DNA of 35,277 nt from Hemiscyllium ocellatum. Lineage: Eukaryota. A model generated the notes under the pieces. That model did no database searches, had not been told where the DNA came from, and saw only the letters and a list, made by a program, of their open reading frames with translations. The stretch covers positions 5,101,239 through 5,136,515 of the forward strand of contig NW_026867487.1 of assembly GCF_020745735.1 (NCBI RefSeq). Direction: 5' to 3'. This document shows positions 1,446-31,306 of this stretch, piece by piece (within the stretch, counting starts at the first letter, position 1; each line of letters opens with the position of its first letter). The translations under genes and the position numbers were made by a program.

Positions 1446-2477
1446 CAGAACATTGGATAGCTGTTTAAAAACGGATGAGTTTAAACTATAACCTCTCGTT
1501 CTAGTACGTCATGCAGATTAGAAAGTAGCCCTTGAAATATTTCCAATCTGAGCCCTCTTAAAAGACTGGCTTTCAGATTTTGGAAACTCGTCAGATGACT
1601 AAAAGCTCTTCTCACTTTCCCTGAATCTCATCATCCCTCTTACTTTAAAATTATGCAGCGGTCATTGAAGCGTTCACCAATGGGAAACTTATGTCTGTGC
1701 ATTTGATCCTGTCCTTTCAATCAAAACTCGAATTTCAATCGAATTTTAGTCAATACAATATTATTGCCCTCATGCCACATTAAGGTTAACTAAAACTTTA
1801 CTGAGCTGCTGAGCGCTGTAAAGCTTGGTTGATTGGATCCACCATGCCAAATTGTTTTCACTTGTTTAGATTTCCGTAATCTATGCAACACGATCAAGAG
1901 AGTTGACAAATAAGAGAAACACAGCTTCTTTTATAGATTAAGCCTTATTATAATCTAGAATTTCGAATGTAAGTGGGAATTCATTCAACACACATAGAAA
2001 GTATTAAAACTTGTACAACTACAGAATGTGGCAATTGCTGTGGCTGTGAAAATAATTATACTTTCTCTTTCAAAGAGCAGCCACAGACACAATGATAGGA
2101 ATACCTTCCATTTGTATTGTGTAGTAACACAATCCTTGATCTTTTATTCTCTCCTTCTCCATTTGTTCATCAGTGCTGTCCTGATGTGTTTTGGGGTGGT
2201 CACCGACTTCACAACATCCAAGATGTCCAGTTGCAGTTGTGCGGCATTACATTCCTTCTGCGCTCACACGGATCAATAAGTTCAGTCAGAGCTGAGTCTG
2301 CTGCAGTTCTGCCTTGAGCTTCCTTTTGATGCCCTTGGCTCTGACACGCCTTCCCTTCCCTGTGATACCATAGATATTGCTCTAGCCATCACTGTTAATC
2401 GTTGAGAACAACGGTTTAGATCAGGATCTCAAACAAAGGGTATTCCAGAATGCAGAATTACAAACCAAGAGTTCATC

Positions 2478-2991
2478 ACGAGGAAACTTTTGGCACCAAT
2501 GCTCATCGTTCTCTAAATTCTCAGTGTGTCTTCCTAGTAACATTCAAGTCCTCCTGACACAGATGTTTCCAACTCACATGCTATGAGTAGGAAACCAGTG
2601 ATGGTAATGAACGTGATCTTGAATACTGCTTTTCGTTTTTCTTAGAATGGAGTCATCAAGACATGTGGGAACAGTCAGTCCCTGAAACGGCGGTTAAACA
2701 GGGAGGCAATGTCACAGTAACATGCAGCTTGAAGTCAAGTGATCCAGACCCGACTTTTACTGGTACAATCAGTTCCCAGGGCAACCTCCACAATACATAA
2801 TTTATATAGTTGCAGCAGAGATTGCAAAGAGGAATCCTGATTTTGCTGAACGATTCTGTTTCACATTTACTAAATCTTGGAATAATACAGAGTAAGCAAT
2901 CAACAAGGCCATCAAATCAGACTCAGACATGGATTTCTGTGCTATGAAGCCTACATTGATAAAGAGTTATGACACAGCCCCTTTAAAGCCT
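2478..2991 (+). pseudogene. TCR alpha/delta-type V pseudogene (V1), paralog of V6
   Basis: Leader 2478-2523 has ACG in place of ATG and a TAA at 2514-2516. V exon 2646-2951 follows TTCTTAG and reads GGNVTVTCSL...WYNQFPGQPPQY...DMDFCAMKP. It has a 1-nt frameshift near 2750 and a TAA at 2893-2895. The RSS is degenerate (TACATTG at 2952-2958, TTAAAGCCT at 2983-2991). Confidence 0.9.
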
Positions 2992-4025
2992 CACTCTGAG
3001 CATGACAGTTGGAGCTCACCGAAAGGTTCTTTCGTATGGAGAAACAGAAAGAACCATTCAACTCCAGAGAAAGAATCACGGGGGTGGTGGGGGTGGGGGT
3101 GGTACTTAAACCGAGAAAAAAAAGTGCACGATAAATAAATCTTAATTACTTTTGAGAGTCATATCAATATGTTAGCTTCGATGTAAACGTGCTAGGAATG
3201 AACTGCACAAACCCATCAGTGAAGATCTGTTTCTGGTTTAGTTTCCCACCAAACATTTTCAATATCTTGCGTTCTCATCCCCCCTGTCAGTGGCCTTTGT
3301 CCATAGATAGAGAAATTAATTTTATGAGGAAGCTTTTCATAATATAAAACTTGCTTTTCATAATGGTAGTTCAGATATAGAGTCATGCCATTTAGATGAG
3401 TTGCAGACTGAGTGGCAAATATATAAAGTAAATACTTTATTCCTCAGTTCACAGATTTGAAAACAGTCATCAGAACAATCCACCGAGCCAGTCATCTCAC
3501 AAACTTATATTTTAAAATCCACTCCCAGGCGATGAGTTTAATACTTTTTATTCAACAGTATTGAGAAATGTTGAGTGAATGGAAGGTACACATTTGAAAT
3601 CCACAGTGGGCTGTTTCGGACATCCACCGATAGACATCAAACAGAACAGAAGGTGTGAAAAAGCAATTCTGAAGGGGGTGCTAAGAGTGAAACATTCTGC
3701 GTGTTGAAAATTTTAATTTTATTACATCCTGCATCTTACAAATCGAACTGTTTTTCCCTATCAGTTTACAGATTTCACGATAAGCATATATTTTGCAATA
3801 AAAATGCAACCTTTGTCACACTATGTACTGCTGCATCAAATGATTAATTAAAATTACATCAATGAACATCCAGCGAGATCTAACAAAGTGGATCCTCACA
3901 GGTACCTGCTGTAATGAAGAGGGCCATCTGCTGATAATCAGTAGATTAATGAGTCCTGTGTCTGTTAAAGTAATGAATTCAAATCGGTGTGTTAGGCTCG
4001 TACTGAACGCATGTTTTCATTTACC

Positions 4026-4249
4026 GAAAGGAGTTGAAAAATGTGGTGCTGGAAAAACACAGCAGGCCAGGCAGCATCCGAGGAGCAGGAGAATCGGCGT
4101 TTCGGGCATAAGCCCTTCTTCAGAAAGAAGGGCGTATGCCCGAAATATCGATTCTCCTGCTTCTCAGATGCTGCCTGGCCTGCTGTATTTTTCCAGCAGC
4201 ACAATTTTCAACTCTGTTCTCCAGCGTCTGCAGTCCTCACTTTCTCCTA
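4026..4249. mobile_element. Hairpin mini-element derived from a Penelope-like 3' repeat, with 7-bp target-site duplication
   Basis: 90-bp inverted arms (4031-4120 / 4125-4214; 9 mismatches; loop CAGA). ATTTACC is duplicated at 4019-4025 and 4250-4256. The paralogous right-arm site (~27990) is empty. The sequence matches the 3' end of the Penelope-like element at ~9165-9290. Confidence 0.8.
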
Positions 4250-4444
4250 ATTTACCTTAAGGATCCTGTCACATATTGAAAGCAAACGTATTCAGTTTTG
4301 GGCCAGGACGCTTCCACGGAGTTGCCTTCACTTTAAATCAATTTATTGATGTTTCCGATGATAAAGAATACAAGTGACAGCTTAATTTTGGAATTTGCCA
4401 CGTAGCACGGCTAAACAAGTAACAAAGAAGTAAAAAGTATCGAA

Positions 4445-4520
4445 ACAATAAATGCCAGAAACCACAGTGCATGAGGCATTGATCATAGACAGAGGGGAAG
4501 CTGACGTTTAAAGTCTACAG
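4445..4520. repeat. Short decayed SINE-like fragment, shared with ~27725-27795 in the other arm
   Basis: Resembles the ATGCTGCCTGA...TTCCAGCA motif of the mini-element family and sits at the paralogous position in both arms. Confidence 0.35.
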
Positions 4521-5549
4521 GAACCTTGATTAAGCTGATAAAAAGTAAAATGTATGCGCGACATATTTGCGAAGGCATGGTGACAGATTTCAAAAGAACC
4601 TGGTTCTTCCTGAAATGGTTATTCTTCAATAACTAAAGATGTACCTGATATCCCCGCCTCTGCTCATATTTTTTTTCTGGACAGAGACACCAGACAACAC
4701 CCAATCAATTGATAAATGCATTGTCAGCCAATCAACGAACTGCATCTCTATTTTGCAATTCAGCACGTCAACTTAGGACGGCGAGAAATAAATTGAAATT
4801 GAAACCGGTAATAACTTGCATTTGAAATTGATACTGCACTTGAAGTTTGGAATTTTTGCATTAGCCCTCATTCATGCAAAGCAGAAATCTGCAGTAATTC
4901 CTTTTCAAAGCAGTGCTTAGATTGTTCTTTTATAACGGGTACTTGATTTTGAAAATTTGGAGCAGACGGTATCTGAGGTTCATTGACATGAAATGCCTTC
5001 ATTGCATGTTTGATAGGGAATAGGTGTTACCATGAACAGTAGAAATGAAAATGAATTGAGTATCCTGACAGTACTTCACGGTGTATGGTAAAACGCATTT
5101 TATTTCACTCTTGCTATAGATATACTCGACACAGACTGATGGCATTACAGCGGTTTCACATTGTCCTGAGTCTGTGATTGTTACCCATTTGTAGAAATCA
5201 CATTTTGAGTTTTCTATCAAAGCAGCTAAATGTTCTTATTCTGATAATGATAGGTTCAGATTTAGGTCCTTATCGCACATTGGTAGCATCCCTGACCTCG
5301 ATGTAGGCAGCTTGCATTGAAGTTTCACCTAGTCTTAGGGTACGTGATAATGTTGTTTAGAAAATAACGTCAGTGACTGTAGAGCCGAATGAGCATGACC
5401 AGTGTTCAGTAACGAACAGTGTATCTATGCACTTCAGGACAGAGATTGTCTTATTTTAGACACTCTTACGATCGGTTACAGTTTAGAATAAGGCATTGTC
5501 ACGTAGCTTCTGTGTCCTTGATACACTGTGTCATAGATTCCTTGCGATT

Positions 5550-5900
5550 TTACAATTTAAAACAAGCTGTGATGTGAGGCATAGATAGAGTGGATAGCCA
5601 GAGACGTTTTCCAACGACGGAAATGGCTATCATGAAGTGGCTTGAATGACGGTTTAGGGGAGATTTCAGAGGTCGTTTCTTTACACAAAGTGTGTTGAGT
5701 GCGTGGAATATACTACCAGAACTGCCAGAAGAATCAGATACATTGGGGACATTTAAAAGACTCTTGGATTGCCACCGTGAATGTTTGGAGAAAGAAAAAT
5801 GAATCTGAGGATGAGTTTCATATAGAGTAGGATAACATAGGATAAAACAACACTGAGAGCCAAAGCCCCTATTCGGTTCTGTACTGTTTCCCATGTTCTA
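5550..5900 (+). mobile_element. CR1 LINE 3'-end fragment inserted before the duplication
   Basis: Contains TTCTTTACACAAAG...GCGTGGAAT...GATACATTGGGGACATTTAAAAGACTCTTGGAT and a ...TGTTCTAAGTTCTAAG tail. The paralog is at ~26340-26660 (-). Confidence 0.75.
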
Positions 5901-7340
5901 AGTTCTAAGCTGCTATTTCGTCCATTTGTAGATTGAATATTGGCAACAGAAGCAAATGAAGCACGAAAATAAGGCCACGATCTGCCAATAAGTGAAACCT
6001 GTCCTGTCTTGGGTTACAATTTAATATGTGTCAAGTTTCAAAACATTTTATGAGTTACTGTGGTTCAGAGATAGTACCCTTAGCTGTAGGCTAGAGGACT
6101 GGGTCTAATTTCACCATAGGAAATAAAAACGGCTACACTCTTGTTTCATGCCATGTACTGAAACAAAAAACTGTTGAAGTCTAAGGCAGAAACCGTGTTC
6201 TCTAAAAGGTTCCTCATAATAGTGTAACATAACGAGTCTATTGTGATGACGTATTAATATGTTAAATCCATACATTAACTTAGATAAGGTCTGTTTTGGT
6301 ACAGAACTGAGTGGTGCAGACTTAGTGTTGCAATGTTATGTGAGGTAATTGTATTGGAATAGCATTCCCTCATTTGCAGTTTTAAGTGCTCAGTATTTGA
6401 CGGATTGCATTATCTATGTATCCATGTCAGGATTCCTGTTACGATCCGACCGATCATATAAATTGTGAAATTGAGATAATACTTAACATATTCTAAACGT
6501 CTTTTGGACAGGAGTTGTTATGTAATTTTACAATAAGTAAGTCTACTAGTTTTCCTTCTCTATGAATGCGAGATCTAAGCACACCATCAGATAAAGGCAC
6601 GAGTGGGATAAAGCTGGAAGTACTCACTGTGTTCTCCAAGCTTTTCACTGTTATCTGATTCCACGCCTTATTGTATTGTAATAGACCACTATATATTTCG
6701 CAATCAGACTGTTTATATTGAGTTAACAGTACTTACAACAGATGTCTACAGTTGCCATGCATGTGGTCCTGACAATTCCTCATCGTCAAACGTAACTACT
6801 ATGGTAAAAATCAGTTTTGGAATGTTTACCAGTTTCTGCAGATACCACTGCATGTAGGGTGTGTCCAGGTTTCTATAGTCACAATCCATCTTCACAGACG
6901 CTCTTCAGCCATGGCTATGGGCTCCAGATGCTGTGTTACTCGATTTGCACGTAGGCCCACAGTGGGCACAGACGAATAAAGTATGAATTAGTTGCTAGTA
7001 TCCATTCAAGCGAGTTTATATGTGAGCGAGCATGTGGAGTATAGAATTTCGCTAGCTGTCCATTATACGGCTATTTCACCACAATAATAATATCAAACAA
7101 GACATCAGACGTTGAACAATGTGCCTTTATGGACATAACTAACACAGACTCTTTCAATTAAAAGAAAACTATTTATTTAAACAAAAATGTTTGTAGTACA
7201 CTTCTGTCAGAAACCTTTAATGCAGTGAGAGTGAGTTGCGAAGAAAAGAGCGAACACAGACACTGCTTAACTTATTCTTCAAGATATTCAGTTCACCGAG
7301 ACAATAAAGTGTCTAGAACCAGAGTCACAGAGTAATTTTT

Positions 7341-7488
7341 CCATTGTGACCTCACTCACTGCATAGGTACAAGTCCATTATGAACTCACTGCGTGGGGAC
7401 AGGTCCATTGTGACCTAAGTAACTTCAGGGAGACAGCCTCAAGATGACCTCAACCTTTTAGGGGTATCAAGTTCATTGTGACCTCATT
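7341..7488. repeat. Degenerate minisatellite, ~34-bp period, about 4.5 units
   Basis: Units start at 7341, 7375, 7405, 7439 and 7473, with core CCATTGTGACCTCA. A decayed paralog lies at ~23770-23920. Confidence 0.7.
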
Positions 7489-7691
7489 AGGTTAGAATGC
7501 CTCTTGGTTTTGGCCCTGCTAACGCCCGAGACTCACTTCCTGTTTAAATTAAACTGGATAACTTTGGAATGCCCCAACGAATATATTCAGGATTAATTAC
7601 TTTTCATAAATGACCAGCAGACTTTCCCAGAAATTTAGTTTAGAGCTGCGAAGACTGAAAGTTTATCAATCTCGATAATCATATCTGATGG

Positions 7692-9293
7692 CCTTCCAGC
7701 TCCCCACTGCTGTGTTTGCCACCACTTCCGCCCCCACCAACGCCACTCACCTGCATTCTGCTGACACGCCTCCCACAGATCCCACTGTCATCATCCTCAA
7801 CCCCAGAACCCTATGGGGAACACCTCTCCTGCTCATGACTCCACCCAATTCGCTCTAATACCACGCCCACTCCAGTGACAGGCTTCGCCCCTACTCCCAG
7901 CTCCACACTGACACCAGATCCTAGTTCCCAGCCCTGCTGAGTTCTAACATCCCTCAAGACCTCCCAGTCACTCAAGACGAACGATCACTCCTCAGCAAAC
8001 GACTCACTTTCAACCTCCTCCGCCCACGTATCAATGAACTTAATACACACCATGACGTCGAACATTTCTTCTGCCGCCTCCGCCTCTGAGCTTACTTATA
8101 CAATCAGGTCTCCCACCCACCTTCCGAGGACCCCTTCGCCCGCCTCCAGCACACTCCATCCAACTGGACAGCACGTGCTGGCCTATTACCTGCCCTTGAC
8201 CTCTTCATTTCCAATTGCCGCTGGGACATTAACCGCCTCAACCTGTCTACCCTCCTCTCCCACTCCAACTTCTCACCCTCACAACGCACTGCCCTCCACT
8301 CCCTCTGCTCCAATCCAGACCTCACCATCAAGCCAGCAGATAAAGGGGGTGCAATGGTAGTCTGGCGCATTGGACTCTACGCAACTGAAGCCAGACACCA
8401 ACTCGAGGACACCTCTTCCCGCCGCCTCCTCGTCCGTGACCCCACCCCCCATCACCAAACCATCATCTTCCAGACCATACAGAACCTCATCACCTCAGGA
8501 GATCTCCCACCCACAGCTTCCAACCTCATAGTCCTGGAACCCCGCACTGCCCGGTTCTTCCTCTTTCCCAAGATCCACAAGCCTGACCACCCTGGACAAC
8601 ACATTGTCTCAGCATGCTCCTGCCCCACTGAACTCATCTCTACCTACCTCGACACTGTTCTATACCTCTTAGTCCAGGAAATCCCCACATATGGTCGAGA
8701 TACCACCCATGCCCTCCACCTCCTCCATGACTTCTGTTTCCCCGGCCCCCGACGCCTCATCTTCACCATGGATATCCAATCCCTCTACACCTCCATCTGC
8801 CATGACCAGGGCCTCCAAGCCCTCCGTTTCTTCCTCTCCCGACGTCCCCAGCAGTACCCTCCACCGATACTCTCATTCGTTTGGCCGAACTGGTCCTCAC
8901 CCTTAACAATTTCTCCTTAGAATCCTCCCACTTCCTCCAGACCAAAGAGGTAGACATGGGCATCCGTATGGGCCCCAGCTATGTGTGCCTCTCACCTTCA
9001 TCCTACCCCCTCCACCCATTGTACTCTTTGCTACCTTCCCCATCCTCTTCCCTGACCTACCACCTTCACCCCCACCCCCACTCACCCACTGTACTCTATG
9101 CTACTTTCTTCCCACCCTCACCCTCCTCTCATTTATCTCTCTACCCTTCAGGCACTCTGCCTGTATTCCTGATGAAATGGTTTTGCCCGAAACGTCGATT
9201 TTCTTGCTCCTCGGATGCTGCCTGAACTGCTATGCTTTTCCAGCACCACTCGAATGCAGAATCTGGTTTCCAGCATCTGCAGTCATTGTTTTT
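7692..9293 (+). mobile_element. Penelope-like retroelement (PLE), internally deleted, left arm only
   Basis: RT motifs KPADKGGA (8330-8353), FPKIHKP and TMDIQSLYTSI (ORF 8354-8920), then frameshifted QTKEVDMGIRMGPSY. It has a pyrimidine-rich tail and a hammerhead-type 3' end. The right arm is continuous across this point (~23550-23560). Confidence 0.85.
9165..9198 (+). ncRNA. Minimal type I hammerhead ribozyme motif (stem II degenerate)
   Basis: CTGATGA at 9169-9175 and GAAAC-GTC from 9189, with a palindromic ACGT stem III. Stem II (ATGG/GCCC) has lost its pairing. Minimal hammerheads are an established feature of PLE terminal repeats. Confidence 0.6.
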
Positions 9294-9352
9294 ACCGAGC
9301 CATTTAAAATCATTGACTATGAGGTAACAGTCAGCTCCCATCCTGGGCAATA

Positions 9353-9714
9353 GGGAACGCGATGGAATAGTTGGATTACCACTGACTGTTAATGCCAAGA
9401 TGCAGGCGATGTTCTAGCGTCTCAGATTCGAATACCACCATGTCAAAAGGCGGAAGTTGAATTCAATGAAAGACCTTGAATTTGGGCTCCAATGATCATC
9501 ATGAATCCGTTGCCGCTTGTCAGACAAACCGATCTCAGTCACGCACCTCTTTTAGGTAAGGAAACTACCATTCTTATCTGGCCTGATTTACATATGAATC
9601 AAGACCCAGAGCAATGTGGTTGAATCTCAAACCACTTCTGGGAAACTAGAGATCGGCAATAAAAGCTTCTCTACCCAGCGATGCCAACATCCCATGAAAA
9701 AAAGAAAAACAAAA
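9353..9714 (+). mobile_element. tRNA-derived SINE, DeuSINE/SacSINE1-like
   Basis: Box-B-like GATTCGAATACC, a central TTTAGGTAAGGAAA...GCAATGTGGTTGA core and a CAGCGATGCCAACATCCCATGAAAAAA tail. The family name comes from recalled consensus and was not confirmed by search. Confidence 0.6.
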
Positions 9715-9829
9715 TTGGATGCGTCTTTGGAGATTAGGACAGGTTCAATTCTGACTGCAGGCCCGGGTTCAACTTTCGGTATGAGTACTAACTCTGAGCT
9801 GGTTGACCAGAAAATGCCAACAAGTCAAT

Positions 9830-10260
9830 GATAGTGTCTGGGTCTCTAAGCCAGGAAATGTCACCTGTTTCAAAGATGCTAAATGACACATCATGAACAT
9901 GTTGTTGAAAAATTATGCACCTGACATGAAGGATTTCAATCTGAACAAGGAAACGAAAATGAGATTTTCCCCTTTACAAAACTGTGGCCTTTTCATCGAC
10001 CGATTGTACCTGATTTTTTCCAACCAAACTGATTATATTTTTACAAGGATTCTTACACTGAAGAATAAATTTTATTTAGGGCAGAGGGATCTTTTATCCA
10101 TTTGAAACATCGTATCTAAAATGAGCAGGCAAACAACTCCATGTTAAATCGCCAAAAGAAACTGTCATCAGTTGTCAAGTAAATGGAATATCAAAAAGAG
10201 AAGGTGAAAAACAATGTAAATAGGCATTTCAAATAGGTGCGGGCATAATAATTGGAATTA
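9830..10260. repeat. Unidentified module present three times (also ~22560-23030 and ~31560-32035)
   Basis: Shared strings such as CTAAATAAAA(C/T)TTATT, CATCGAC.GATTG.ACCTG and TTTCCTGGCTTA occur in all three copies. Confidence 0.75.
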
Positions 10261-11530
10261 TCAGTGTGTTCGCTCATGTTTTATTACTCTATTCACTCCA
10301 TACCCCATTTCCACCCGTATTCCTCTTTCAGCTGTTCTTCATCAGTTAAAGTGAACATGCGTAGGATGCAGACAGATTTCTCGAGATCAAGGCGTCACTA
10401 TGTCCACTCCATCACTGCGGATGCAACTGAGAGCCATCACACCTTCTTCACTCTATCAACACTGTAGTTGCTCGCCACACAATTTCCATTTGCTGTGAGT
10501 AATCTGCTCTGAATTCATGAATAGGGAGATTGCTGCTGCTAGTCTTTTCCTGTCATTGGTTAGATCAGCAGCGAGATGAAATAAGGATCTGTACTTCTGC
10601 TCTGACTGAATGTTTTCTGTGTTAAAGGCTGAGAGACTCAGGAAGTATAAAACAGAACAATTTCGCACCCTCTCCTCAGCATTAACTCACAACACAGTTG
10701 ATATTTCCTCTCAGTAAAATTTCATTCTCCCCATGATTACTTGCAAGTCTGTCACAGTAGTAATGATGCGGTGATGCTGATGAAAATGTTGGTGATGATT
10801 ATCTAAACTAAACTTGTTCTGATTGTTGGTGCCGCTATTAAATCTGGTTACTGGAATGACAGGAAATAGTGTGGAATAAAATTTTTATTATCACTGTTGC
10901 AGAAATTGATGACATACTAAATGAAACCTCTAACACGAATATTCACGCTTGTTCTGATATAGTCTGTATCTAGGCATGTTCTATAATTCACGATTTGGCC
11001 CACTGAGAACAGGAATTTCAGAATCACGAATTAGTTTTTCTTCCATGTATAATGGAACTGAGGAAAGTACTAAAGTAACAATTGATCCTACCCTGAAGTT
11101 TGAGACTGATGTCATGAGAAGCATACACTGCTGCAAAGATTCTGATCAAAACTCCATAATGAGATTTCCATGTATTGTTTGACAAAGAATGCCATTGTAC
11201 CATTAAGCAGGTGAAATAATTTGAAGTCCACAGTCTCCTGAAGTGAATGCAACTTTCAACAGCTTTGGTCACTGGTCCCCATGAATGTCTTCACTATGAC
11301 ATGATTGTTTAGTCTGATATCGTTACACAATGCCCTGTCTACTAAGACCTGCTGTCCAGTCTACTCAACAGCAAGCTGCTCTAAGAAACTATCCTGAAAA
11401 GCCTCTTTGAGCTCTCCATCTAGGGTAGCTTTAGATGTTTGACAGTTACAGTAGAAATATCGATTAAAATATTCCATGATTATGTCGAAACTTCTGAAAA
11501 ATGCTATACCCACTTCCTATTTGAGGGGGA

Positions 11531-11569
11531 GTGGCCACACACCACCCACATTTCCTGCTTTGAAAGTTT
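11531..11569 (-). promoter_or_regulatory. Candidate T-cell enhancer core (TCF/LEF + ETS + RUNX-like), left copy
   Basis: AAACTTTCAAAGCAGGAAATGTGGGTGGTGTGTGGCCAC is 37/39 identical to 21220-21258, within otherwise visibly diverged arms. Confidence 0.45.
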
Positions 11570-12764: not shown

Positions 12765-12802
12765 AGTTATGATACAAGACTTTCTCTCGTTCCTCCACTG
12801 TG
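12765..12802 (-). other. RSS of V2: CACAGTG, 22-bp spacer, ATCATAACT
   Basis: Heptamer 12796-12802, spacer 12774-12795 and nonamer 12765-12773, assigned by alignment with the V3 RSS. Confidence 0.75.
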
Positions 12803-13106
12803 AGGCTCATTGCACAGTAATAGACCGCGGTGTCACACAGCACCAGCTTTGGAATGGTCATTCGGTACAACTTGACAGATTTCTCTATTGTATCAGAAAA
12901 TCGGATCTGAGCGAAATCCGCCTTAAGTACAGCACTGCTGCTCTCGAACCTCTGGACTGCAAACTCGAGCTGCCTTCCCGGATACTGACAGTACCAGAAC
13001 AAATAACAAGCATTGCCTGTACAGGTGCAGTTTAAAGTGACATCTTGTCTCTCTGTCTGCATGAGCGAGGTTTCCGGTTGACTAACAGAATCACCATTGC
13101 TCAGAT
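12803..13106 (-). CDS. TCR alpha/delta-type V exon (V2), open frame, four extra Cys, no canonical leader
   Basis: After the TTCCAG acceptor it reads LSNGDSVSQPETSLMQTERQDVTLNCTCTGNACYLFWYCQYPGRQLEF...LVLCDTAVYYCAMSL. The exon is 304 nt with both canonical Cys and the Trp present and no stop codon. Confidence 0.85.
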
Positions 13107-21219: not shown

Positions 21220-21258
21220 AAACTTTCAAAGCAGGAAATGAGGGTTGTGTGTGGCCAC
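21220..21258 (+). promoter_or_regulatory. Candidate T-cell enhancer core, right copy
   Basis: AAACTTTCAAAGCAGGAAATGAGGGTTGTGTGTGGCCAC; paralog of 11531-11569. Confidence 0.45.
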
Positions 21259-23145
21259 ACACCCTTAAATACGAATTTAGCGTGGCATAAAGAAAAAAGT
21301 CATTTTCAGGATTTAGAGGTAATCATGGGATATTTTAATCCATATTTATACTGTAAATGTCAATCAGCTCAAGGTAGGCCAGATGAAAAGCACATCGATA
21401 TTTTTCAAGATAGTGTCTTAGAACACCTTGTTCTGGAGTCGACTGGAAAGGTTTAAGTAGACATGGCATTGTGTCACGATATAGACTAAATAATAATCTC
21501 ATACTGAAGAAATCATAGGGATTAGTGACCAATCGAGGTTTAATGTTGCATTCAATTTGAGGTAGACAGTGGACTTCGAATTATTTCACCTGTTTCACGG
21601 CAAAATGGAGTTCTCTGACGCGCAATACATGGAAATCATACTATGGAAATTTGCTCAGGGTATTTGCAGGCTTCCATGCTTCACATGATATCAGTGTCAA
21701 AGCTCTGGGAAGTATCAATGCTTACTTTGTTACTTTTCGCAGTTTTGTAAAACATAGAGGTAAAACTAATTCGCAATTCTGAAATTCGTGTTCACAATGA
21801 GCCAAAGCGTGAATTATGGAGCATGTGTAGATGTACAGTGCGTCAGAACAAGGATGCATATTTGTGTTCTAGGTTTATTATAGATTGTCATCAATTTCTT
21901 CTACAATAGTTACTTATTTATAAAATGATGTTGCACCACTTCTTCTCAGCCCAGTAACAAGATTTGAAAGTGACAGCAACAACTAGAACTAGCTTAATTT
22001 AGATAATCATAACCATTTTTTTCATCAGCATTACCGCATCAATGCTGTTGTTACAGACATTAGAGTAGCAATGGGGAAAATAGAGTTTTACATAGAAGAA
22101 ATAACGACTGTGTCACGACTTAATGAGGAGGGAGGATGAGATCATTCTTTTTGATACTTCCTGAGTCCACCAGGCTTTAACACAGGAAACATTAAGTCAG
22201 AGCAGAATTACATATCCCTGCTTCATTTTGCAGCTGATCTAACCAATGACAGGGATGGGCTAGCAGCAATAATCTCCTGATTCACGATTTCAGAACAGAT
22301 TGCTCACAACAAATGAAAATTGTATGTTGAGCAACTGCAGTGTCGCCAAAGCAAAGAAGGTGCACAATAACTCTCGTTTGCAGCCGCATCGATGGAGCAG
22401 ACATAGTGATGCCTAGGTCTCGGGAAGTATGTCTGCATCCTATACCTGTTCACTGTTAACTGATGAAGAATAGCTAAAGGAGGATTGCGGTGTATAAATT
22501 GATTAGAGTGCTAAAATATCAACAGTCTCATTAATCATTCAGATTATTGTGAATGTATGTATTTGAAATGCCTATTCACATCATTTTTCTACTTCACTTT
22601 TTCCAAACCCAATTCACTTAGTAACTGATGACGGGATCCTTTGAGCATTTAACATGGAATCTTTTGCTTTCTCGTATTAGATACGCTGTTTTGTATAGTG
22701 AAAACGTCACACTGTCCTAAATAAAACTTATTTTTCTCTGTAATATTGTTTGTCTAAAATATTGTTACTTTGATTCGGAATAATCAGCTGCAATTGGTCG
22801 ATCAAGAGGGCACAGCTTTGAACACACAGAGACTTACTCTGACGCTCTTTGGGAAAGAAGACAGTCTTATTTTGGTTTCCGGGCTCAGATTGAATCCTTC
22901 ATGTCCGGTGCAATGGTGGTTTACATTTTTTCTGAACAACATGTTCAGATGTGTGATTCAGCATTTTGAAGTAAGTGAGTTTTCCTGGCTTACCCGATTC
23001 AAACGCTACCACCGCATCATTACCGCTGATCTCATGTCCTAATCAATCTCTTCAGTGTTACTATGCGTACCAGAAACTGAACCCGAGACGCCTGACATAA
23101 TTGCGTGCATCCAAAATTCCCAAGACGCATCTGACATTGTTATGT

Positions 23146-23495
23146 CTTTTATTCATGGAATGTGGGCATCGCTGGCCAGGCCAATATTTATTGTCCATCT
23201 CTAATTGCCCATAGTGTGGTTGATAATCAAGCATTTTACTGTGGGACCGGATTCGCATGTAGACCAGACCAGGAAAGAATGGCATTGCCCTCCCGAAAAG
23301 ACATTGATGACTGAGATGGGTTTGTTTGACAACTGGCAATCATGATCACCATGACAGCCCTAATTCAGACTTTCTTTATTGGATTCGATTTCCACATTCT
23401 GCCAAGGTAGGATTCGGAGCTGATTCCCTAGAACATTGCCTACTTCTCTGGCTTAACAGTTGGGCGATAATCCCACGACACCAACGCATTCCTTA
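23146..23495 (-). mobile_element. DeuSINE/SacSINE1-like SINE (paralog of 9353-9714)
   Basis: The reverse complement ends CCAGCGATGCCCACATTCCATGAATAAAA, and the flanks match the left arm. Confidence 0.6.
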
Positions 23496-23833
23496 TTGTC
23501 TAGAGTGGGAAGTGACCATTAGCTTATAGTTAATGATTTAAAATGGACCTAATGACAATCCGACATGGTCATTAAGAGTAATAAACTGTCGGTCTACGCA
23601 GCTGCAAATATCTGGGAAAGCCTGCCTGTCATTTTTGCCTTTTTATGACAATTATAAATCCTGAATACATTCATTGAGTCGTTCCAACGTTATTCAGCTG
23701 AATACAACTCGAAAGCGATTCATGTGCGACTGCAGGGTCAAAACTAAGAGGCATTCTGACCTGAGTGATATTACAATGATTCTGATACCCCTAAAGTGGT
23801 GCGGTCATAATGAGGATGTCTTCCAGCAGTGAC

Positions 23834-23841
23834 TGACGTCA
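23834..23841. promoter_or_regulatory. Perfect CRE palindrome TGACGTCA inside the decayed 34-bp repeat
   Basis: Motif match only. The left-arm counterpart is TGACCTAA. Confidence 0.25.
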
Positions 23842-24546
23842 GAATGGACCTGTCCCCACGCAGTTAGTCAGGTCAAATGAGCTGTTCCTATTAAGCGATT
23901 GAGGTAACAATGGACCTATCCACCCGAAAGACTGAAATGACGGGCTTAGGCGCTCCACTGCTTGTATGAGATGAACATCGTGAGAAGAGATTAAGAGTTC
24001 ATGTTCGCTCTTTTCTTCGCAACTCACTCTCACCCCATTAAACTTTTCTAACAGAATTACATTTCAAAACGTTTTTGATCATACTAGTTTTCTGTTAATT
24101 GAGAGAGCCTGTGTTAGTATATGTTCATGACGACTCAGTTTAGATTAATTCTTCAAAATTTGTCATCGTGTTTGACACTATTACTGAGGTAAATTTGCTA
24201 CATTAAGGACAGCTCGGTAAACTAGACACTCCGCATAATTACTCATGTACAAACTCGCTTGAATGGATATTGGTAACTTATTCATACGTTTTTCTGCTGC
24301 GCCCATAGGTGGCCGACATGCAGATCGAGTAATACAGTCTCTGGTGATCACAGGCGTGGCTGAAGTGTGTCTGTGAAGTTGGATTATGACTATAGAAATC
24401 TGGACACAAGTTGCACGCAGTGGTCTCTGCAGAAACTAGTACACAATCCAACAGCGATTTTCACTAAAGTGGTAACATGAGACCATGAGAAAGTTTCAGG
24501 ACCATATATATATGGTAACTGTTGACATCTATAGTAAGTACAGTTA

Positions 24547-25523
24547 TAGAGTCGAAGAGTCATAGAGATGTACAATATGGAAACAGACCCTTCGTTCCAA
24601 CCTGTCCATGCCGACCAGATATCCCAACCCAATCTAGTCCCACCTGCCAGCACCCGGCGCATATCCATCCAAATCCTTCCTATTCATTTACCCATCCAAA
24701 TGCCTCTTAAATGTTGCAATTGTACCAGCCTCCACGACATCCTCTGGCAGCTCATTCCATACATGTACCACCCTCTGCGTGAAAAGTTGCCCCTTAGGTC
24801 TCTTTTATATCTTTCCCCTCTCACCCTAAACCTATGCCCTCCAGTTCTGCACTCCCTGACAACAGGGAAAAGACTTTATATATTTATCATATCCACGCCA
24901 CTCATAATTCTGTAAATCTCTATAAGGTCACCCCTCAGCCTCCGACGCTCCAGGGAAAACAGCCCCAGACTGTTCAGCCTCTCCCTACAGCTCAGATCCT
25001 CTAACCCTGGCAACATCCTTGTAAATCTTTTCTGAACCCTTTCAAGTTTCACAACATCTTTCTGATAAGAAGGAGACCAGAATTGCACGCAATATTCCAA
25101 CAGTGGCCTAACCAATGTCCTGTACAGCCGCAACATGACCTCCCAACTCCTGTACTCAATACTCTGACTAATAAAGGAAAGCATACCAACCGCCTTCTTC
25201 ACTATCCTATCTTCCAGCAACTCCACTTTCAAGGAGCTATGAACCTGTACTCCAAGGTATCTTTATTTAGCAACATTCCACAGGACCTTACCATAAAGTG
25301 TATAAATCCTGCTAAGATTTGCTTTCCCAAAACGCAGCATCTCGCATTTATGTAAATTAAATTCCATCTGCCACTTCTCAGCCAATTGGCCCATCTGGTC
25401 CAGATCCTGTTGTAATCTGATGTAACCCTCGTCACTGCCCACTACACCTCCAATTTTGGTGTCATCTGCAAACGTATTAACTGTACCTCTTATGCTTACA
25501 TCCAAATCATTTATATAAATGAT
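24547..25523 (-). mobile_element. CR1-type LINE, 5'-truncated, right arm only
   Basis: RT motif NTFADDTKIGGVV (ORF 25263-25505), then WQMEFN..KCE and RPLLEYCVQFWSP...RLRGDLIE. The left-arm site (~6720) is empty and its flanks rejoin. Confidence 0.93.
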
Positions 25524-26339
25524 ATCTCAATATAATCGGTCTGAGTACGAAAGATTAGTATTACTATGCCTTGGGGCACAGAATCAAATAAAAGCTAAAA
25601 GTTTGGATAACATTGGCGAGTATTTGCAGCATTATTCCACTCGTGCCTTAATCTGCTGGTGTACTTAGATCCTGGCTTCATAGAGAAGGATTACTGTTAG
25701 AGGTACTTACAGCAAGATAACTACTGATAATATCTAAAAGACCTGTAGAATATGTTAAGAATTATCTTGAATTCACGAGTTATATGATAAATAGATTGGG
25801 TTTTAACAGGAATCCTGACATGGATACATAGATAATGCATTTCATTAAATAGTGAGCACTTAGAACTGCAAACGATGGACTGCTGTTCCCAGACAATTAC
25901 CTTACATAACCTCAGTAACACCAAGTCTGCACCACTCAGTTCTGTACCAAAACAGAACCTATCAAAGTTGCTGTGTTGAGTTAACAAATTAATAGTCATC
26001 AGTAGGGACACGTAATCCGACGCTATCATGAGGAACGTTTGAGAGAACACCGTTTCTACTTCAGACTTCAAGAGCAATCTTTTCCCAACGTGGCATGAAA
26101 CAAGAATGTGGCCCTTTTTATTTCCTACTATGAATGTTGAATGCATTCCTTCTGGCCTAGAGAAAAGGGCACCATCTCTGAAGCACAACAATACAAAAAT
26201 ATTTTAAAACTTGCTTGATATTAAATCGTAGCCCCGGACAAGGACAGATTTCAGTCATTGGCAGATTTCAGCCTTATGTCTGAGCTTCATTTGATTATAT
26301 TCTCAAGATAGAGGCTGGAAATGACCTGAACACCAGCTT

Positions 26340-26660
26340 AGAACATAGAACACTGAACAGTACAGCACAGTATAGAGGCTTCATCCTCAATATTGTTTTA
26401 TCTTACTTTATCCTACTCTAAGATGAAACTAATCTTCACACCCTTCATTTTGCATTCATCCACGTGGGTATCCAAGAGTCGCTTAAATGTCGCTAATGTA
26501 TCGGAATCTACTACCACTGCTGGCAGTACATTCCACAACTCACTGTGCAAAGAAACGACCTCTGGCATTTTCCCTAAACCTTCCTCTAAACCGCTTGGCG
26601 ATAGCCATTTCTGCCTAGAAAAACGTCTCTGGCTATCCACTCCACCTATGCCTTAAAACT
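26340..26660 (-). mobile_element. CR1 3'-end fragment (paralog of 5550-5900)
   Basis: The minus strand reads HSELWNVLPAVVVDSDTLATFKRLLD, and the AGAACATAGAACA tail is present. Confidence 0.75.
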
Positions 26661-29035
26661 GTGTTTTAAGTTGCAAAGTCACTGTGAATTTATGACACAC
26701 TGCACCAAGGACACAGATGCTATGTGACAATGTCTTATTCCGGACTGCAAGAGAAAATGAGGCAGTTTTTCTTCTGAAATATAGAGATACACATTTCGTC
26801 ACTGAACACTAGTAGTGCTCATTGGGTACTACTAGCTACTGTCGACATTTTCAAAAGAAAGTTACAACGCATCCTTGGACTAAGTGATACTTCAATGCAC
26901 GCTGCCTACATCGAAGGTAGGAATGCTACCAACGTGTGTTAAAAACCCTTACTCTGAGCCTTGCATTATGGGTAACAATCACTGAATCAGGACAATGTAA
27001 ACCCGCTGTACTGCGATCAGTGTCTGTCAAGTAGGTCTATAGCAAGGGGGCAATAAAATACTTTTTTTTATCCACCATGATGTACTCTCAGAATCCTCAA
27101 TTCATTTTCGATTTTACTGATCAATGTAACACGTATTCCGTATCAAATAGGCAATGAAAGCATTTCATGACTTTTCCAGCACCTCAGTGCATTGTATGTT
27201 GCAATACAACAGCGAATCTCAGACACCAACTACTCCAAATTCTCATGCGAAATCCATTTCAAAGACAAACATCACGCCTTCTCGGCATCAAGCGCCCGTT
27301 ATGACAGAACAATCCAAGCATTGCTGTGAGAAGGAAATATAGGTTTCCGCCTTGCATGCATGAGGACAAACACTAAAACTTCCAAATTTCCAGTGCAATA
27401 TCAGATTCAACCGCAGGTTAGCCCCGATTTCAATTTCATTCTATTTCTCACCATCCTTTGTTGGCGTCTTGAATCGTTGAATAAAAAAGCAGTTAGCTGA
27501 TTGGCTGACATGCAGAACAATGGCAACTGCCAATTGAGTTTATTTTGCCTGGTGTCTCCTTCCTGACCAAACTATCAGCTGAGACACGGATATCAGGTGC
27601 ATTTTCCTCTTTGTTTGCGAATAACCATTTCAGGGAGAACCAGTTTGTCTTCAACTCTGTCATCGTGTGTTCGTCAATATGCCGGTGCATGGTTTTTAGT
27701 TTTTTCCAGCTCCGACATCTAACTTATAGACTTTAAACGTTTGTGTCCCCTTTCTCCATGAATGCTGCCTGATGCGCTGTGACTTCCAGCATTTTTCTGT
27801 TTCCATGCCTTTTTACTGATTCACCACCTCTTCGGCCATGCTCTGTGGCAAATTCCAAAATTAGGCAATGTCTTGCATTCTTTGTAATCGGATGACACAA
27901 ATATCAGTATCTCGATTTGAAGTGAAGGAAATTCTTTGAATGCCTTCTGGAACAAAATTGAACACTTTTTAAATTCAATATGCACCAGGATCCTTGAGGT
28001 GAATGAAAGCACGCGTCAGGCGAACATTTAAAGAAAAACGTCCCAGTCAGTGCCTAGCACACTGATTTAAATTCATTAATTTAACGGACACAGGACTGAT
28101 TAAACTACTGATAATCTGCAGATGTCCCTCTTCACTACAGCAGTTGTTTGTGAGGATCCACTTACGTTAGATATCATTGGAAGTTCATTGAACTAATTTG
28201 AATTAATCAGTTATACACAATTCTATTGCAGCAGTCCATAATGTGACAAAAGGTTGCATTTCCCCCAAAATATTTACTGAATAGTGACATTTGGAAACAT
28301 ATATGGCAGAACATTTCAAATTGTAGGATGCAGAATGTCAGAAGATTCAAGTATCTGCTACAAAGCATGGTATACTTTTGGGAGCCTCTTCAGTTTGCCT
28401 TTTGACAACTTTAATTTTGTTTGATGATTATCGATGGATCGCTGAAAAAATCCAATTGTGGCTTTCCAATGTGAATCGATCATTCATTCATTCCACATCT
28501 CATACAACTGTTGAAGAAACAATATTTAACTCATTGCCTGGGAGCAGAACTTAAAATGGAATTTGATAAGCTGGCTGTCTCTGCTTGTTCTGATGACTTC
28601 TCTCAAAGCTGTGAACAGAGGAGTGAGGCATTTCATTTATATTTGCTATTCAGTCTGCAATTCCACTAAATGGAATGGCTCTATTTCTGAACTATAATAT
28701 CGTATAGCAAGTTTTATGCGATTGGAAGTTCACTGGCAAAATCATTTATGGAACAAAAAGGACACTGACTGAGGGATGAGAAGGCAAGACATTGGAATAG
28801 TTTGGTGGTACACAAAATTGGAAACGAAACTCCACTGATAGATTTGTGTAGTTCATTCTTAGCACACTTGCATCTGAAGCTAATATACTGATATTCTTCT
28901 GAAACGAAGCTAACTTTAATTTATTGTGCATTCTTTTTTTCTCACTTTAAGTCGCTTCTCTATGAATCTTTCTCTGGAGCTGAATTGTTCTTTCTGTTTC
29001 TCGGTAGGAAAATGCCTTTTGCTGAGCTCACTATG

Positions 29036-29075
29036 AGTTTTTGTAAGGGCTGTGTCATAACTCTGTATCATTGTG
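29036..29075 (-). other. RSS of V6: CACAATG, 24-bp spacer, ACAAAAACT
   Basis: Heptamer 29069-29075, spacer 29045-29068 (24 nt), nonamer 29036-29044. Confidence 0.85.
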
Positions 29076-29382
29076 GGCTTCAAAGCACAGAAATACATGG
29101 CGCAGTCAGAGATGTTGGCCTCGCTGACTGTTAGCTCGGTATTCTTCGTGGATTTAGTAAATGTGAAAGAGAATCGTTCAGAAAAATTAGGATTCCTCTT
29201 TAAAATCTTTCCTCCAAGTATATAAACCATATACTGTGGAGGCTGCCCTGTGAGCTGACTGTACCAATAAACGTCTGGGCTGGAATCGCTTGTCGTCAAG
29301 CTGCAGGTGAGTGTGACATTGCCTCCTTCCTTAACAGCCATTTCAGGGTCTGCTTGTTCCACCGTGTCTTCCTGACTCCATT
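29076..29382 (-). CDS. TCR alpha/delta-type V exon (V6), apparently functional
   Basis: After TTCTTAG it reads WSQEDTVEQADPEMAVKEGGNVTLTCSLTTSDSSPDVYWYSQLTGQPPQY...ISDCAMYFCALKP. It is open and 307 nt long. Confidence 0.92.
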
Positions 29383-29508
29383 CTAAGAAAAACGAAAAAT
29401 AATATTCAAAATCATGCTCATTACCGTCATTGTTTTCCTAATAATGGCATCTCATTTGGAAACATCTGTGGCAATTGGAAATAGAATGTTACAAGCAAGA
29501 AGCATTAC

Positions 29509-29554
29509 TGATAATGAAGAAAATGACGAGCATTGGTGCAAGAAGATTCCTCAT
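29509..29554 (-). CDS. Leader exon of V6: MRNLLAPMLVIFFII
   Basis: 46 nt with an A|GTAATG donor and a 126-nt intron, in frame with the V exon. The V1 paralog has the same layout. Confidence 0.85.
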
Positions 29555-31255
29555 GGTGCACTCTGGGTTTGTAATTCTGCAGTCTGGAAAACCCTGTGTC
29601 TGAGTTCCTGGCCAAACCCGTTGCTCTCAAAGACAAACAATGACGGCTGCAGCGATCTCAGTGTTATCACAGGGAAGGGACGGCGGAACAAAATGGAAGC
29701 TGAAGGCGGAACTGCAGCAGACTTAGTTCTGAGTGAACGCATTGCTCCCTGCGAGAACAGAAGGCTAGCAACGCAACACAGATGTATCCGGAGCTATTGG
29801 ATGCTGCTAAGTCTGTGGCCATCCTGCACCCGAGCACAGCGTCACTGATGAACGAATAGAGAGAGAGAAGATAAAAGATCAAGGATTGCATAATTACACA
29901 ATACAAATGGAAGCTATTCTTTGTATTGTGTCTGTGGTTTCTCTCTCAAACTTTCATGTAGTTGCCACATTCTGTAGCTGTGTAAATTCAATTCCTTTCC
30001 ACGTGTTTTTGCAACCGTATTCTGAAAATTACCATTGAATCAAAACCCACTTAAGGTGGAAATTGTAGCATATAATAAGGTTAAACGTGTAAAATAAGGC
30101 ATGTTTCTCTTCTTTGTCAATCTTCCCGATCGTGTTTCTTTGATTACTGAACTCCAAACAAGAGAAAACACTTTGGTATGATGGATTCCATCAATCAAGC
30201 TTTTTAGCGCTCAGCTGCTCAGTAAAGTTTTAGTTAACCTTAATATGACGTCTTACCTTAATTTGTCTAAAATTCACGTGATTCACATGTCTCTCGTTTC
30301 ATCAAATCAGTAAATCGCAGTCTCACAAATAATCTCTGGCTGAACTCCAAGCGCAGCTCCACATTCGTTGCCTCCACTCCCCATTTTCTCCATCGTTCTG
30401 AATCATCTGTTTTTCTAAAGTTGTCCATCTCCTGTCTGCATACTACAAATCAAATCAATGAGACGATCCGGGGTTTTGCACGGTCCAGGGATCGGAACTA
30501 TCCTGACAAGTTTGAAGATTGAATAATACCTTCCAGGTGCTGTAGTCGTGGGGCATTTGCTATTTTACCACCATTGCATTGCTTTAATTACTGTTCAGGA
30601 ATGGTAGATATATTCTTCTTGTATATTTTTTCAAAAAGTAAGCGTGAATTCTTGACTTAAAAGCAGCAAAGTCAGAGAAAAAGCTGCTCTTACAAAATCA
30701 GTCAAGGTTTGACATCAGAGGTGAAAACACCACACTGGGCTGGAAGGCAGCCAGCCAGAGGAATCAAGGTAACGGGCAGCAACCCTTGGAGCAGAAGAGG
30801 CTCAGTGGTCATGATTAGCATGTGAAAATTAGGAGAGATGCAGATCGTAAGGAAAGGAACAAACGTAGGTAGAATGGACAGGAATAAATGTTTCCTGTTG
30901 ATGGACACCTCGATGATCACTGCAGACAAGTTTATCGTAAGATGCAATAGATTCAGCAAAAATGTTTTTATTCAGCCAACGTGTGTCCAGAATCTAGCAG
31001 ACAATCATTGAGAGTGGTAGAGGAAAAAACTGTGTTAGCATTTGATAATTCTTTCTACAAGTACTTGTGATACTAGGCAACCCAAGGGAATTGGCCAGTT
31101 GTTCGAAGATAAGATTAGGATAGTTAATTTCTTGTTATTTACAAACGCAGTTTTGTTGCTGCAAAGAACAGTTTCATGTGCCGTAAAATTCTTTCCCTGT
31201 ATGACTCAATGTCTCGTGTGCAAACTTGAATATCTGCTTGTGCATTCCTGTGTGG

Positions 31256-31262
<7 letters not shown>

Positions 31263-31302: not shown

Positions 31303-31306
<4 letters not shown>

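What the first reader, a model, noticed from the sequence alone, without database searches (positions are those of the whole stretch)
1780..30250. About 28 kb of the TCR V array is one old giant inverted duplication
Seen: the window folds back on itself around a ~1.3-kb spacer (~14190-15530). V1(+) pairs with V6(-), V2(-) pairs with V3(+), and intergenic DNA and old repeats also pair. The arms are clearly diverged (roughly 70-80% by eye, not computed). Inference: V-repertoire expansion here happened by inverted rather than tandem duplication. This leaves V segments in both orientations, so some must rearrange by inversion whatever the J-C polarity. The arms could also support ectopic inversion or gene conversion.
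Basis: partly seen in the sequence, partly recalled or inferred. Interest (0 to 1): 0.7.

Follow-up and report, generated by a model that had tools for sequence, protein, structure and literature searches.

The report
Old inverted duplication in shark TCR V array
About 29 kb of this T-cell-receptor V-gene array really is an ancient, strongly diverged inverted duplication around a 1.35-kb single-copy spacer. It is present in independent samples and in two related species, but it is one event among many duplications and inversions, of a kind already known from antigen-receptor loci.

Summary
Window 1776-14179 aligns collinearly with the reverse complement of 30247-15543: 10,154 aligned columns, 76.2% identity, K2P 0.289. 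A weak extension reaches about 1540 and 31026. V1 pairs with V6 and V2 pairs with V3.

It is not an assembly fold-back. Contigs from an independent sample of the same species bridge both centre junctions without a mismatch. Contigs from two related species (about 6% diverged) bridge them too.

The 1.35-kb centre is not a symmetric axis. In at least 7 paralogous copies elsewhere in the genome it continues the left-arm sequence and then runs into a flank that the window lacks. The right arm is therefore joined, inverted, to the far end of a single-copy spacer, which is the geometry of a fold-back or template-switch inverted duplication.

The arms belong to a multi-copy cassette family that arose in one old burst. 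Trees make the inner modules only weak sisters (81/83). They do not make the outer modules sisters.

Mixed V orientation already exists inside each arm, so the palindrome is not its only cause. Identity is uniform and the longest exact match is 36 bp, so there is no sign of gene conversion or present recombination potential. Verdict: real, old, and an ordinary kind of feature. Modest interest.

The parts
1540..14183 (+). Left arm (outer module O_L about 1540-7689, TE insertions 7693-9299, inner module I_L 9300-14183)
   Evidence: Inverted collinear HSPs. Weak outer extension. Inner end fixed by alignment to the right arm.
14184..15538 (.). Single-copy spacer S. It is contiguous with the I module in all other family copies.
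   Evidence: S follows I in one HSP on C95, C1773, C96 (4 places), C76, C68 and C74:4.86 Mb. In 7 paralogues S runs on into a shared flank Y that the window lacks.
15539..31026 (-). Right arm (I_R 15539-23546, O_R 23558-30247, weak extension to about 31026)
   Evidence: Junction S/I_R is bridged by contig 15321-16929 of independent sample X1 with 0 mismatches.
2669..2979 (+). V1 pseudogene (frameshift, stops, heptamer TACATTG), partner of V6
   Evidence: tblastn 54.6-67.9% to V6 with stops. Translations.
12764..13106 (-). V2: open V exon 13106-12803, heptamer CACAGTG, 23-nt spacer, poor nonamer TCATAACTG. Partner of V3.
   Evidence: Pfam V-set 1.4e-7.
17089..17431 (+). V3: open V exon 17089-17392 plus RSS CACAGTG-23-ACAATAACT
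   Evidence: Pfam V-set 4.9e-12.
18404..18706 (-). V4 pseudogene (no Cys23, in-frame stop). It lies in a right-arm stretch, 17554-20257, that the left arm has lost.
   Evidence: The stretch is present in the other family copies, so its absence from the left arm is a deletion.
29036..29382 (-). V6: open V exon 29382-29076 plus RSS CACAATG-24-ACAAAAACT. TCR-alpha-like.
   Evidence: Pfam V-set 5e-17. Best single-domain PDB matches are TCR alpha chains.
4005..4250 (.). Left-arm-only insertion of a self-complementary high-copy short element
   Evidence: Self-inverted hit 4031-4214 at 88%. Many copies at ~90% genome-wide.
7693..8992 (+). Left-arm-only dispersed repeat (TE fragment), shared with the ~90% copies of O_L
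   Evidence: At least 40 copies at 86-89% on many contigs. The C95 copy matches the window through 8983.
24546..25520 (-). Right-arm-only young LINE-like insertion
   Evidence: At least 40 copies at 91-92%. Weak RVT_1 match.
30275..30872 (.). Right-arm-only stretch of about 600 bp that interrupts the weak outer extension

Best explanation
A single ancient germline inverted duplication of a roughly 12-15 kb cassette. The cassette has an outer module O with a V1/V6-type V and an inner module I with a V2/V3-type V plus a V4-type V. It sits in a TCR alpha/delta-like V array.

Shown: the ancestral unit was O-I-S-Y. In the window the left copy keeps I-S, and the right copy is joined in reverse to the far end of S, so S (1,355 bp) is a single-copy spacer.

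Inferred: this is the product expected from a fold-back or replication template-switch event. A break or stalled fork at the S/Y boundary would let the 3' end prime on the complementary strand 1.35 kb back and copy I and O in reverse.

Shown: the event belongs to the same old burst that created the whole cassette family (pairwise K about 0.26-0.30) and is about 4-5 times older than the split from two related species (about 0.06).

Later changes, each shown by comparison with other copies:
- a 2.5-kb deletion removed the V4-type segment from the left arm;
- TEs inserted separately into each arm;
- the left arm was truncated near 1550;
- V1 and V4 decayed.

V3(+) and V6(-) keep open frames and good 23/24-spacer RSSs. 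If both are used, at least one must join by inversion.
For: Collinear inverted alignment over 10,154 columns.

S is contiguous with I in all other copies. In those copies it continues into a shared Y that is absent from the window, and the break is resolved to a few bases at 15538/15539. No orphan S without an adjacent I was listed anywhere in the genome.

I_L and I_R are sisters in the best tree (82/86 and 81/83).

The arms share about 10 kb of collinear sequence, including 9300-12598/23546-20257. Other family members match that block only in fragments at similar divergence.

Contigs bridge both junctions in an independent sample at 100% identity, and in two related species at about 94%.

The spacer length lies within the 0.77-70 kb range reported for fold-back inverted duplications (PMC3907307).
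Against: The sister relation of the inner modules is weak, with an internal branch of 0.013. The alternatives are not rejected (p-AU 0.15-0.17).

For the outer module the best tree puts a copy on C96 nearer to O_L than O_R is. Holding O_L and O_R together costs 5 log-likelihood units (p 0.064).

Inverted microhomology at the joint cannot be assessed after this much divergence.

The Y flank expected beyond the duplication could not be located, because the contig ends 4 kb past the right arm.

Only the 40 best candidates per genome search are scored, so an orphan S could have been missed.
Confidence: 0.68

Rival explanations
1. Tandem duplicates, one flipped later. Two neighbouring direct copies of the O-I-S-Y cassette arose in the old burst. 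A later two-break inversion, with one break between I and S of one unit and one between S and Y of the other, put them head to head. The inversion could then be much younger than the arm divergence, and only older than the split from the two related species.
For: The family does grow by tandem duplication (O_R then O'' in the window; O then O' on C95 and C1773). Other family loci carry inversions of their own: on C95 and C1773 the O modules are reversed relative to I-S, and an inverted Y-like piece lies between them. Trees do not force the arms to be sisters.
Against: This model predicts a second S, inverted and joined to Y, at the other end of the flipped segment. All S copies found sit next to their own I. 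It needs an extra deletion to explain the single S. The arms are far more collinear with each other than with any other copy.
Confidence: 0.22
2. Chance juxtaposition. The arms are unrelated members of the cassette family brought together by several independent rearrangements. The apparent palindrome then only reflects shared family membership.
For: The O tree is star-like, with O_L nearer to a C96 copy (94/92). The region is heavily reshuffled: window 1-1568 belongs to a different duplication family, and O_L has four ~90% copies elsewhere.
Against: The O-I joint and the order of 8 blocks are the same in both arms over about 12 kb, apart from dated TE insertions and one deletion. No other copy shares this much structure with either arm.
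Confidence: 0.08
3. Assembly artefact: a fold-back chimera or a wrong-orientation join at the end of contig C74.
For: The window is the last 35 kb of a 5.14-Mb contig, a place where such artefacts occur.
Against: The arms are 24% diverged, whereas artefactual fold-backs are near-identical. There are no N runs. Contigs of an independent sample tile 12600-18500 with 0 mismatches across both joints, and two other species have the same joints.
Confidence: 0.02

Closest known systems
Human IGK locus: distal V-kappa cluster as a large duplicate of the proximal cluster
   Same: A block of V segments in an antigen-receptor locus was duplicated, so the repertoire holds paired paralogous V genes. PMC8945572 states that the 400-kb distal cluster results from duplication of 36 proximal genes. 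That the distal copy is inverted and joins by inversion is textbook knowledge from my own memory, not checked here.
   Different: The human copies are hundreds of kb long, 800 kb apart and very similar, and the duplication is polymorphic in humans. Here the arms are 12-15 kb, 1.35 kb apart, 24% diverged and fixed across at least three species.
Atlantic salmon TRA/TRD locus with an inverted block of 29 TRAV genes
   Same: A TCR alpha/delta V array holds V genes in both orientations. The inverted functional TRAV are used at frequencies comparable with the others (PMC8559430).
   Different: In salmon one large block is inverted relative to the rest. Here orientation alternates on a scale of a few kb, and the inverted copy is a recognisable duplicate of its neighbour.
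Fold-back inverted duplications with a single-copy spacer (Hermetz et al. 2014, PMC3907307)
   Same: Both have non-inverted and inverted copies separated by a short normal-copy spacer (766-70,466 bp, median 3.4 kb). Here the spacer is 1,355 bp and is shown by paralogues to be the natural continuation of one arm.
   Different: The human cases are recent, megabase-scale, terminal and pathogenic, with 2-8 bp of inverted microhomology. Here the event is ancient, small and interstitial as far as can be seen, and the microhomology is no longer readable.
Sex-chromosome palindromes kept alike by arm-to-arm gene conversion
   Same: Inverted arms around a short spacer that carry multi-copy genes.
   Different: Those arms are more than 99.9% identical (own knowledge). 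Here they are 76% identical with no conversion tracts, so this is not a member of that class.

Membership tests
Inverted segmental duplication of fold-back / template-switch type | Two collinear arms in opposite orientation | tested here: met
   8 collinear inverted HSPs, 10,154 aligned columns
Inverted segmental duplication of fold-back / template-switch type | A single-copy spacer that is the natural continuation of one arm | tested here: met
   I-S is contiguous in all other copies. In 7 paralogues S continues into Y, and the window's S is joined to the reversed I_R.
Inverted segmental duplication of fold-back / template-switch type | Short inverted microhomology at the spacer/inverted-copy joint | tested here: inconclusive
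   Joint located to +-3 bp. About 0.29 substitutions per site have erased any 2-8 bp signal.
Inverted segmental duplication of fold-back / template-switch type | The arms are each other's closest paralogues | tested here: inconclusive
   I modules are sisters at 81-82/83-86, with alternatives at p 0.15-0.17. O modules are not sisters in the best tree, p 0.064.
TCR alpha/delta V-gene array | V-set Ig domains with conserved Cys...WY(R/S)Q...Y(Y/F)C | tested here: met
   Pfam V-set for V2, V3 and V6. Translations.
TCR alpha/delta V-gene array | A 23-spacer RSS directly after the V exon | tested here: met
   V3 7-23-9, V6 7-24-9, V2 7-23 with a poor nonamer.
TCR alpha/delta V-gene array | Closest to TCR alpha/delta V rather than to Ig or other TCR chains | tested here: inconclusive
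   The best single-domain PDB matches of V6 are TCR alpha chains. The top matches of V3 are antibody scFv and light chains. No homologue was found in the large protein collection.
TCR alpha/delta V-gene array | Linkage to TRAJ/TRAC or TRDC | tested here: inconclusive
   The Pfam model of the TCR alpha constant domain found nothing over its cut-off in the genome. The contig ends in the window.
Homogenised palindrome (arm-to-arm gene conversion) | Near-identical arms or patches of near-identity | tested here: not met
   76.2% overall, best window 88%, longest exact run 36 bp.
Assembly fold-back artefact | Near-identical arms with no independent read support across the centre | tested here: not met
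   Diverged arms. Bridging contigs in an independent sample and in two other species.

The most novel reading that the evidence does not exclude
This cassette family may be a recurrent hot spot for small fold-back or inversion events. Besides the window's palindrome, the C95/C1773/C96 loci have their O modules reversed relative to I-S, with an inverted Y-like piece between them, and V3/V4-type segments sit tail to tail in every copy. V orientation in this shark's TCR alpha/delta array would then alternate every few kb as a long-maintained state. Inversional V-J joining, which keeps the intervening V segments available for further rearrangement, would be a routine mode rather than an exception.
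Probability: 0.25. Interest if true: 0.5.

Novelty: new member of a known kind. Interest (0 to 1): 0.33.

Why it matters
The finding documents, with a base-level junction and cross-species support, how one piece of a cartilaginous-fish TCR V array was built. An inverted duplication with a single-copy spacer has been retained for several times longer than the age of the species group, and it has not been homogenised.

It gives a concrete pair of intact, oppositely oriented V segments (V3 and V6). Repertoire sequencing of these two could test whether deletional and inversional joining are used side by side in a shark.

It also corrects two tempting readings. The palindrome is not the source of mixed V orientation here, and its arms are too diverged to drive recombination today. 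Inverted V blocks and inverted V duplications are already known in human IGK and in teleost TRA/TRD, so the result adds a case and not a principle.

Tried and rejected
Paralogue structure was therefore reconstructed from hit tables and the 34 loci already held.
- The first search with the right outer arm was swamped by a LINE. I repeated it without the LINE.
- A strict RSS pattern search found nothing. A looser scan and direct reading found the signals.
- A homology search with V6 in the large protein collection found no candidate. This is a word-index limit, not evidence of novelty.
- The search for the TCR alpha constant gene with Pfam PF09291 gave nothing over its cut-off, so J-C polarity is unknown.
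- The search for the missing Y flank found it only beside S in paralogues.
- Leader exons: a candidate exists for V6 (ATG at 29554). I saw none within about 600 bp upstream of V2 or V3, and I left this open.
- Expression: no run on record as RNA holds the stretch. A run guessed to be RNA holds 31% of the V6 words.
- RAG-mediated germline inversion was considered and rejected. The joint is 1.6 kb from the nearest V RSS, and two 23-type signals do not pair under the 12/23 rule.
- PMC12227049 and PMC2193639 held nothing on V-array inversions.
Full report
**1. Observation.**

The window is the last 35,277 bases of a 5,136,515-base contig (C74) of a 3.98-Gb genome. It contains no N.

BLASTN of the window against itself gives eight inverted HSPs that form one collinear anti-diagonal from 1776/30247 to 14179/15543, at 71-82% identity and E from 0 to 1e-53. 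Block-wise global alignment gives 10,154 aligned columns, 76.2% identity, K2P 0.289 and 536 gap columns. A more permissive search extends the pairing weakly (63.5%, E 1e-8) to L 1540-1718 / R 30872-31026, with about 600 right-arm-only bases at 30275-30872. A paralogue on C95 links the same two stretches independently. The paired region is therefore about 1540-31026.

**2. Gene content.**

tblastn and reading of the frames give six V-like segments:

| Segment | Strand | Coordinates | State |
|---|---|---|---|
| V1 | + | 2669-2979 | frameshift, stops, spoiled heptamer |
| V2 | - | exon 13106-12803 | open; heptamer, 23-nt spacer, poor nonamer |
| V3 | + | exon 17089-17392 | open; CACAGTG-23-ACAATAACT |
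| V4 | - | 18706-18404 | no first cysteine, in-frame stop |
| V6 | - | exon 29382-29076 | open; CACAATG-24-ACAAAAACT |
| V7 | - | 34735-34442 | several stops |

- V2, V3 and V6 match Pfam V-set.
- The best single-domain matches of V6 among solved structures are TCR alpha chains.
- The top matches of V3 are antibody fragments, so the chain assignment of the V2/V3 type is less sure.
- V1 pairs with V6, and V2 pairs with V3 at 69% amino-acid identity (dS 0.355, dN/dS 0.58).

**3. Differences between the arms.**

Each difference can be dated by comparison with other copies.

- Left-only 4005-4250 is a self-complementary short element with many ~90% copies.
- Left-only 7693-8992 is a dispersed repeat with at least 40 copies at 86-89%.
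- Right-only 24546-25520 is a LINE-like tail with at least 40 copies at 91-92% and a weak RVT_1 match.
- Right-only 18997-19236 is another short interspersed element.
- The right-only stretch 17554-20257, which holds V4, is present in the other family copies. Its absence from the left arm is therefore a deletion.

**4. Is it real?**

The window lies at a contig end, where fold-back chimeras occur, but such artefacts have near-identical arms. I laid the contigs of four public runs on 12600-18500.

- An independent sample of the same species tiles the stretch with 0 mismatches. One contig covers 12600-14491, across the I_L/S joint. Another covers 15321-16929, across the S/I_R joint.
- A related species (organism B) has one 3,160-base contig across the first joint and one 4,536-base contig across the second. 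It shows 340 mismatches in 5,795 aligned bases (5.9%).
- A third species (organism C) has contigs 13709-14866 and 14894-16286 across the two joints. It shows 370 mismatches in 5,767 aligned bases (6.4%).

No paralogue within the genome is closer than 78% for this stretch, so these contigs are orthologues. The structure is real and older than the split of the three species. The ratio 0.289/0.06 puts the arm divergence at roughly 4-5 times that split. This is an inference that assumes similar rates.

**5. The arms belong to a family.**

Searches of the whole genome show that both modules are multi-copy.

- The inner module I with the 'spacer' S occurs on C95, C1773, C96 (four places), C76, C77, C68 and C74 at 4.86 Mb.
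- In every one of these copies S follows I in the same orientation as in the left arm.
- In seven fetched copies S then continues into a shared sequence Y that the window lacks.
- The window follows the paralogues up to about 15538 and then switches to the reverse complement of I_L, starting at the equivalent of 14183.

The centre is therefore not an axis of symmetry. S is a single-copy stretch that belongs to the left copy, and the right copy is attached backwards to its far end.

Loci on C76, C77 and C96 (two places) have the order O-O-I-S with the same relative orientation of O and I as both arms. Loci on C95, C1773 and C96 (two more places) have their O modules reversed relative to I-S, with an inverted Y-like piece between them. 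Orientation changes are thus common in the family. The opposite orientation of the outer and inner V, and the tail-to-tail V3/V4 pair, predate the palindrome.

**6. Are the arms each other's duplicates?**

- A maximum-likelihood tree of the inner module (2,023 columns, 11 rows) puts I_L and I_R together at 82/86. The internal branch is only 0.013, against tips of 0.12-0.14. Joining either arm to the C95 group instead is not rejected (p-AU 0.15-0.17).
- The outer-module tree (2,273 columns, 8 rows) is star-like. O_L groups at 100/100 with four copies only about 0.076 away (C95, C1773, C96 twice). A C96 copy is placed nearer to that group than O_R is (94/92). Forcing O_R with the O_L group costs 5 log-likelihood units (p 0.064).

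So the duplication cannot be separated in time from the burst that made the family.

Structure speaks more clearly than the trees. The arms share the O/I joint and about 10 kb of ordered sequence, including 9300-12598/23546-20257. Other copies match that block only in fragments at similar divergence.

**7. Mechanism.**

A copy and its reversed copy, separated by a short stretch that is single-copy and continuous with one of them, is the product described for fold-back inverted duplications. In those cases the spacer is the hairpin loop, reported at 766-70,466 bp with a median of 3.4 kb (PMC3907307). Replication template switching gives the same geometry. The 1,355-bp spacer fits. Microhomology at the joint can no longer be judged.

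The main rival is a later two-break inversion of one of two tandem copies. It predicts a second, displaced S-Y joint. Every S copy listed sits beside its own I, but the searches score only the 40 best candidates and the contig ends 4 kb beyond the right arm, so this is not decisive. I put the direct inverted duplication at about 0.68 and the inversion at about 0.22.

**8. Later history.**

- The left outer module (1553-8983) has four ~90% copies elsewhere. These include the left-only TE and, beyond 1553, a stretch similar to what follows the right arm (30843-32030).
- The left arm therefore once extended further out and was truncated near 1550. There, a different duplication family of C74 begins: window 1-1568 has 11 copies at 78-87%.
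- The right arm runs on into a further partial O unit (31633-32030, similar to 22651-23045) with the V7 pseudogene.

**9.

- Inverted duplication did add V segments here, but it is one event among tandem and dispersed duplications.
- Both strands carry intact V segments (V3 on +; V6 and V2 on -), so if all are used, one orientation must join by inversion. Use was not testable: J-C could not be located, and only a run guessed to be RNA holds part of V6.
- Gene conversion or ectopic inversion between the arms is not supported. Identity in 200-column windows is 0.762 +- 0.039. The maximum is 0.88, upstream of V2. The longest exact match is 36 bp.

**10. Comparison with what is known.**

- The human IGK distal cluster is a duplicate of the proximal one (PMC8945572). 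That it is inverted is from my own knowledge.
- TRBV30 lies inverted behind TRBC2 (PMC8945572).

The present case is smaller, older and more tightly spaced, but it is of the same kind. I found no paper describing V orientation in a shark TCR alpha/delta array. This is a gap in the searched library, not proof of novelty.

Earlier notes of this scan name the genome as the epaulette shark. I did not verify that.

Noticed in passing
window 32937-33405: A 469-bp stretch that is 95% identical to its own reverse complement, that is, a near-perfect local palindrome. It lies in the partial O'' unit beside short interspersed repeats.
   Followed up: no
window 4031-4214 (also 9166-9284, 32731-32944): A self-complementary element of about 185-220 bp with dozens of ~90% copies genome-wide. 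It hits in both orientations at each site, so it looks like a MITE or a hairpin SINE.
   Followed up: partly
window 1553-8983 versus C95:189660-196793, C1773, C96 (two places): The left outer module has four copies at about 90-93% identity, a much younger duplication wave than the palindrome. One boundary falls within 10 bp of the end of the TE at 8992. The other falls at 1553, where a different duplication family starts.
   Followed up: partly
window 1-1568: This stretch belongs to another segmental-duplication family confined to C74, with 11 copies at 78-87% between 4.69 and 5.08 Mb on both strands. An old LINE fragment is embedded at 580-1449.
   Followed up: no
window 18404-18706 (V4): V4 has Phe in place of the first conserved cysteine and a stop just before 'LYRQ', where the conserved tryptophan would be. 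It may be a dead member of the Cys23/Trp41-less V family that other notes of this scan describe.
   Followed up: no
window 13107-13680 and 16500-17088: I saw no ATG-led hydrophobic leader exon within about 600 bp upstream of V2 or of its partner V3, although both have a splice acceptor. The most conserved stretch between the arms (88%) lies at 13210-13423, upstream of V2.
   Followed up: partly
C95:190950-222793, C1773:4866-36535, C96:1120976-1152800, C96:1898799-1932869: These are four nearly identical blocks of about 30 kb (tips 0.001-0.02) holding O, O', an inverted Y-like piece, I, S and Y. They are either very recent segmental duplications or redundant assembly of one locus on small scaffolds.
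   Followed up: no
C74:3.89-4.54 Mb: About 20 further V2/V3-type V exons at 72-77% identity lie on the same contig. Those at 4.34-4.53 Mb have one orientation. Those at 3.89-3.99 Mb, and one at 4.54 Mb, have the other.
   Followed up: no
window 29048-29400 (V6): A small run of the source individual, guessed to be RNA, holds 31% of the sampled V6 words. Two probable RNA runs of a fourth organism hold 17-22%.
   Followed up: partly
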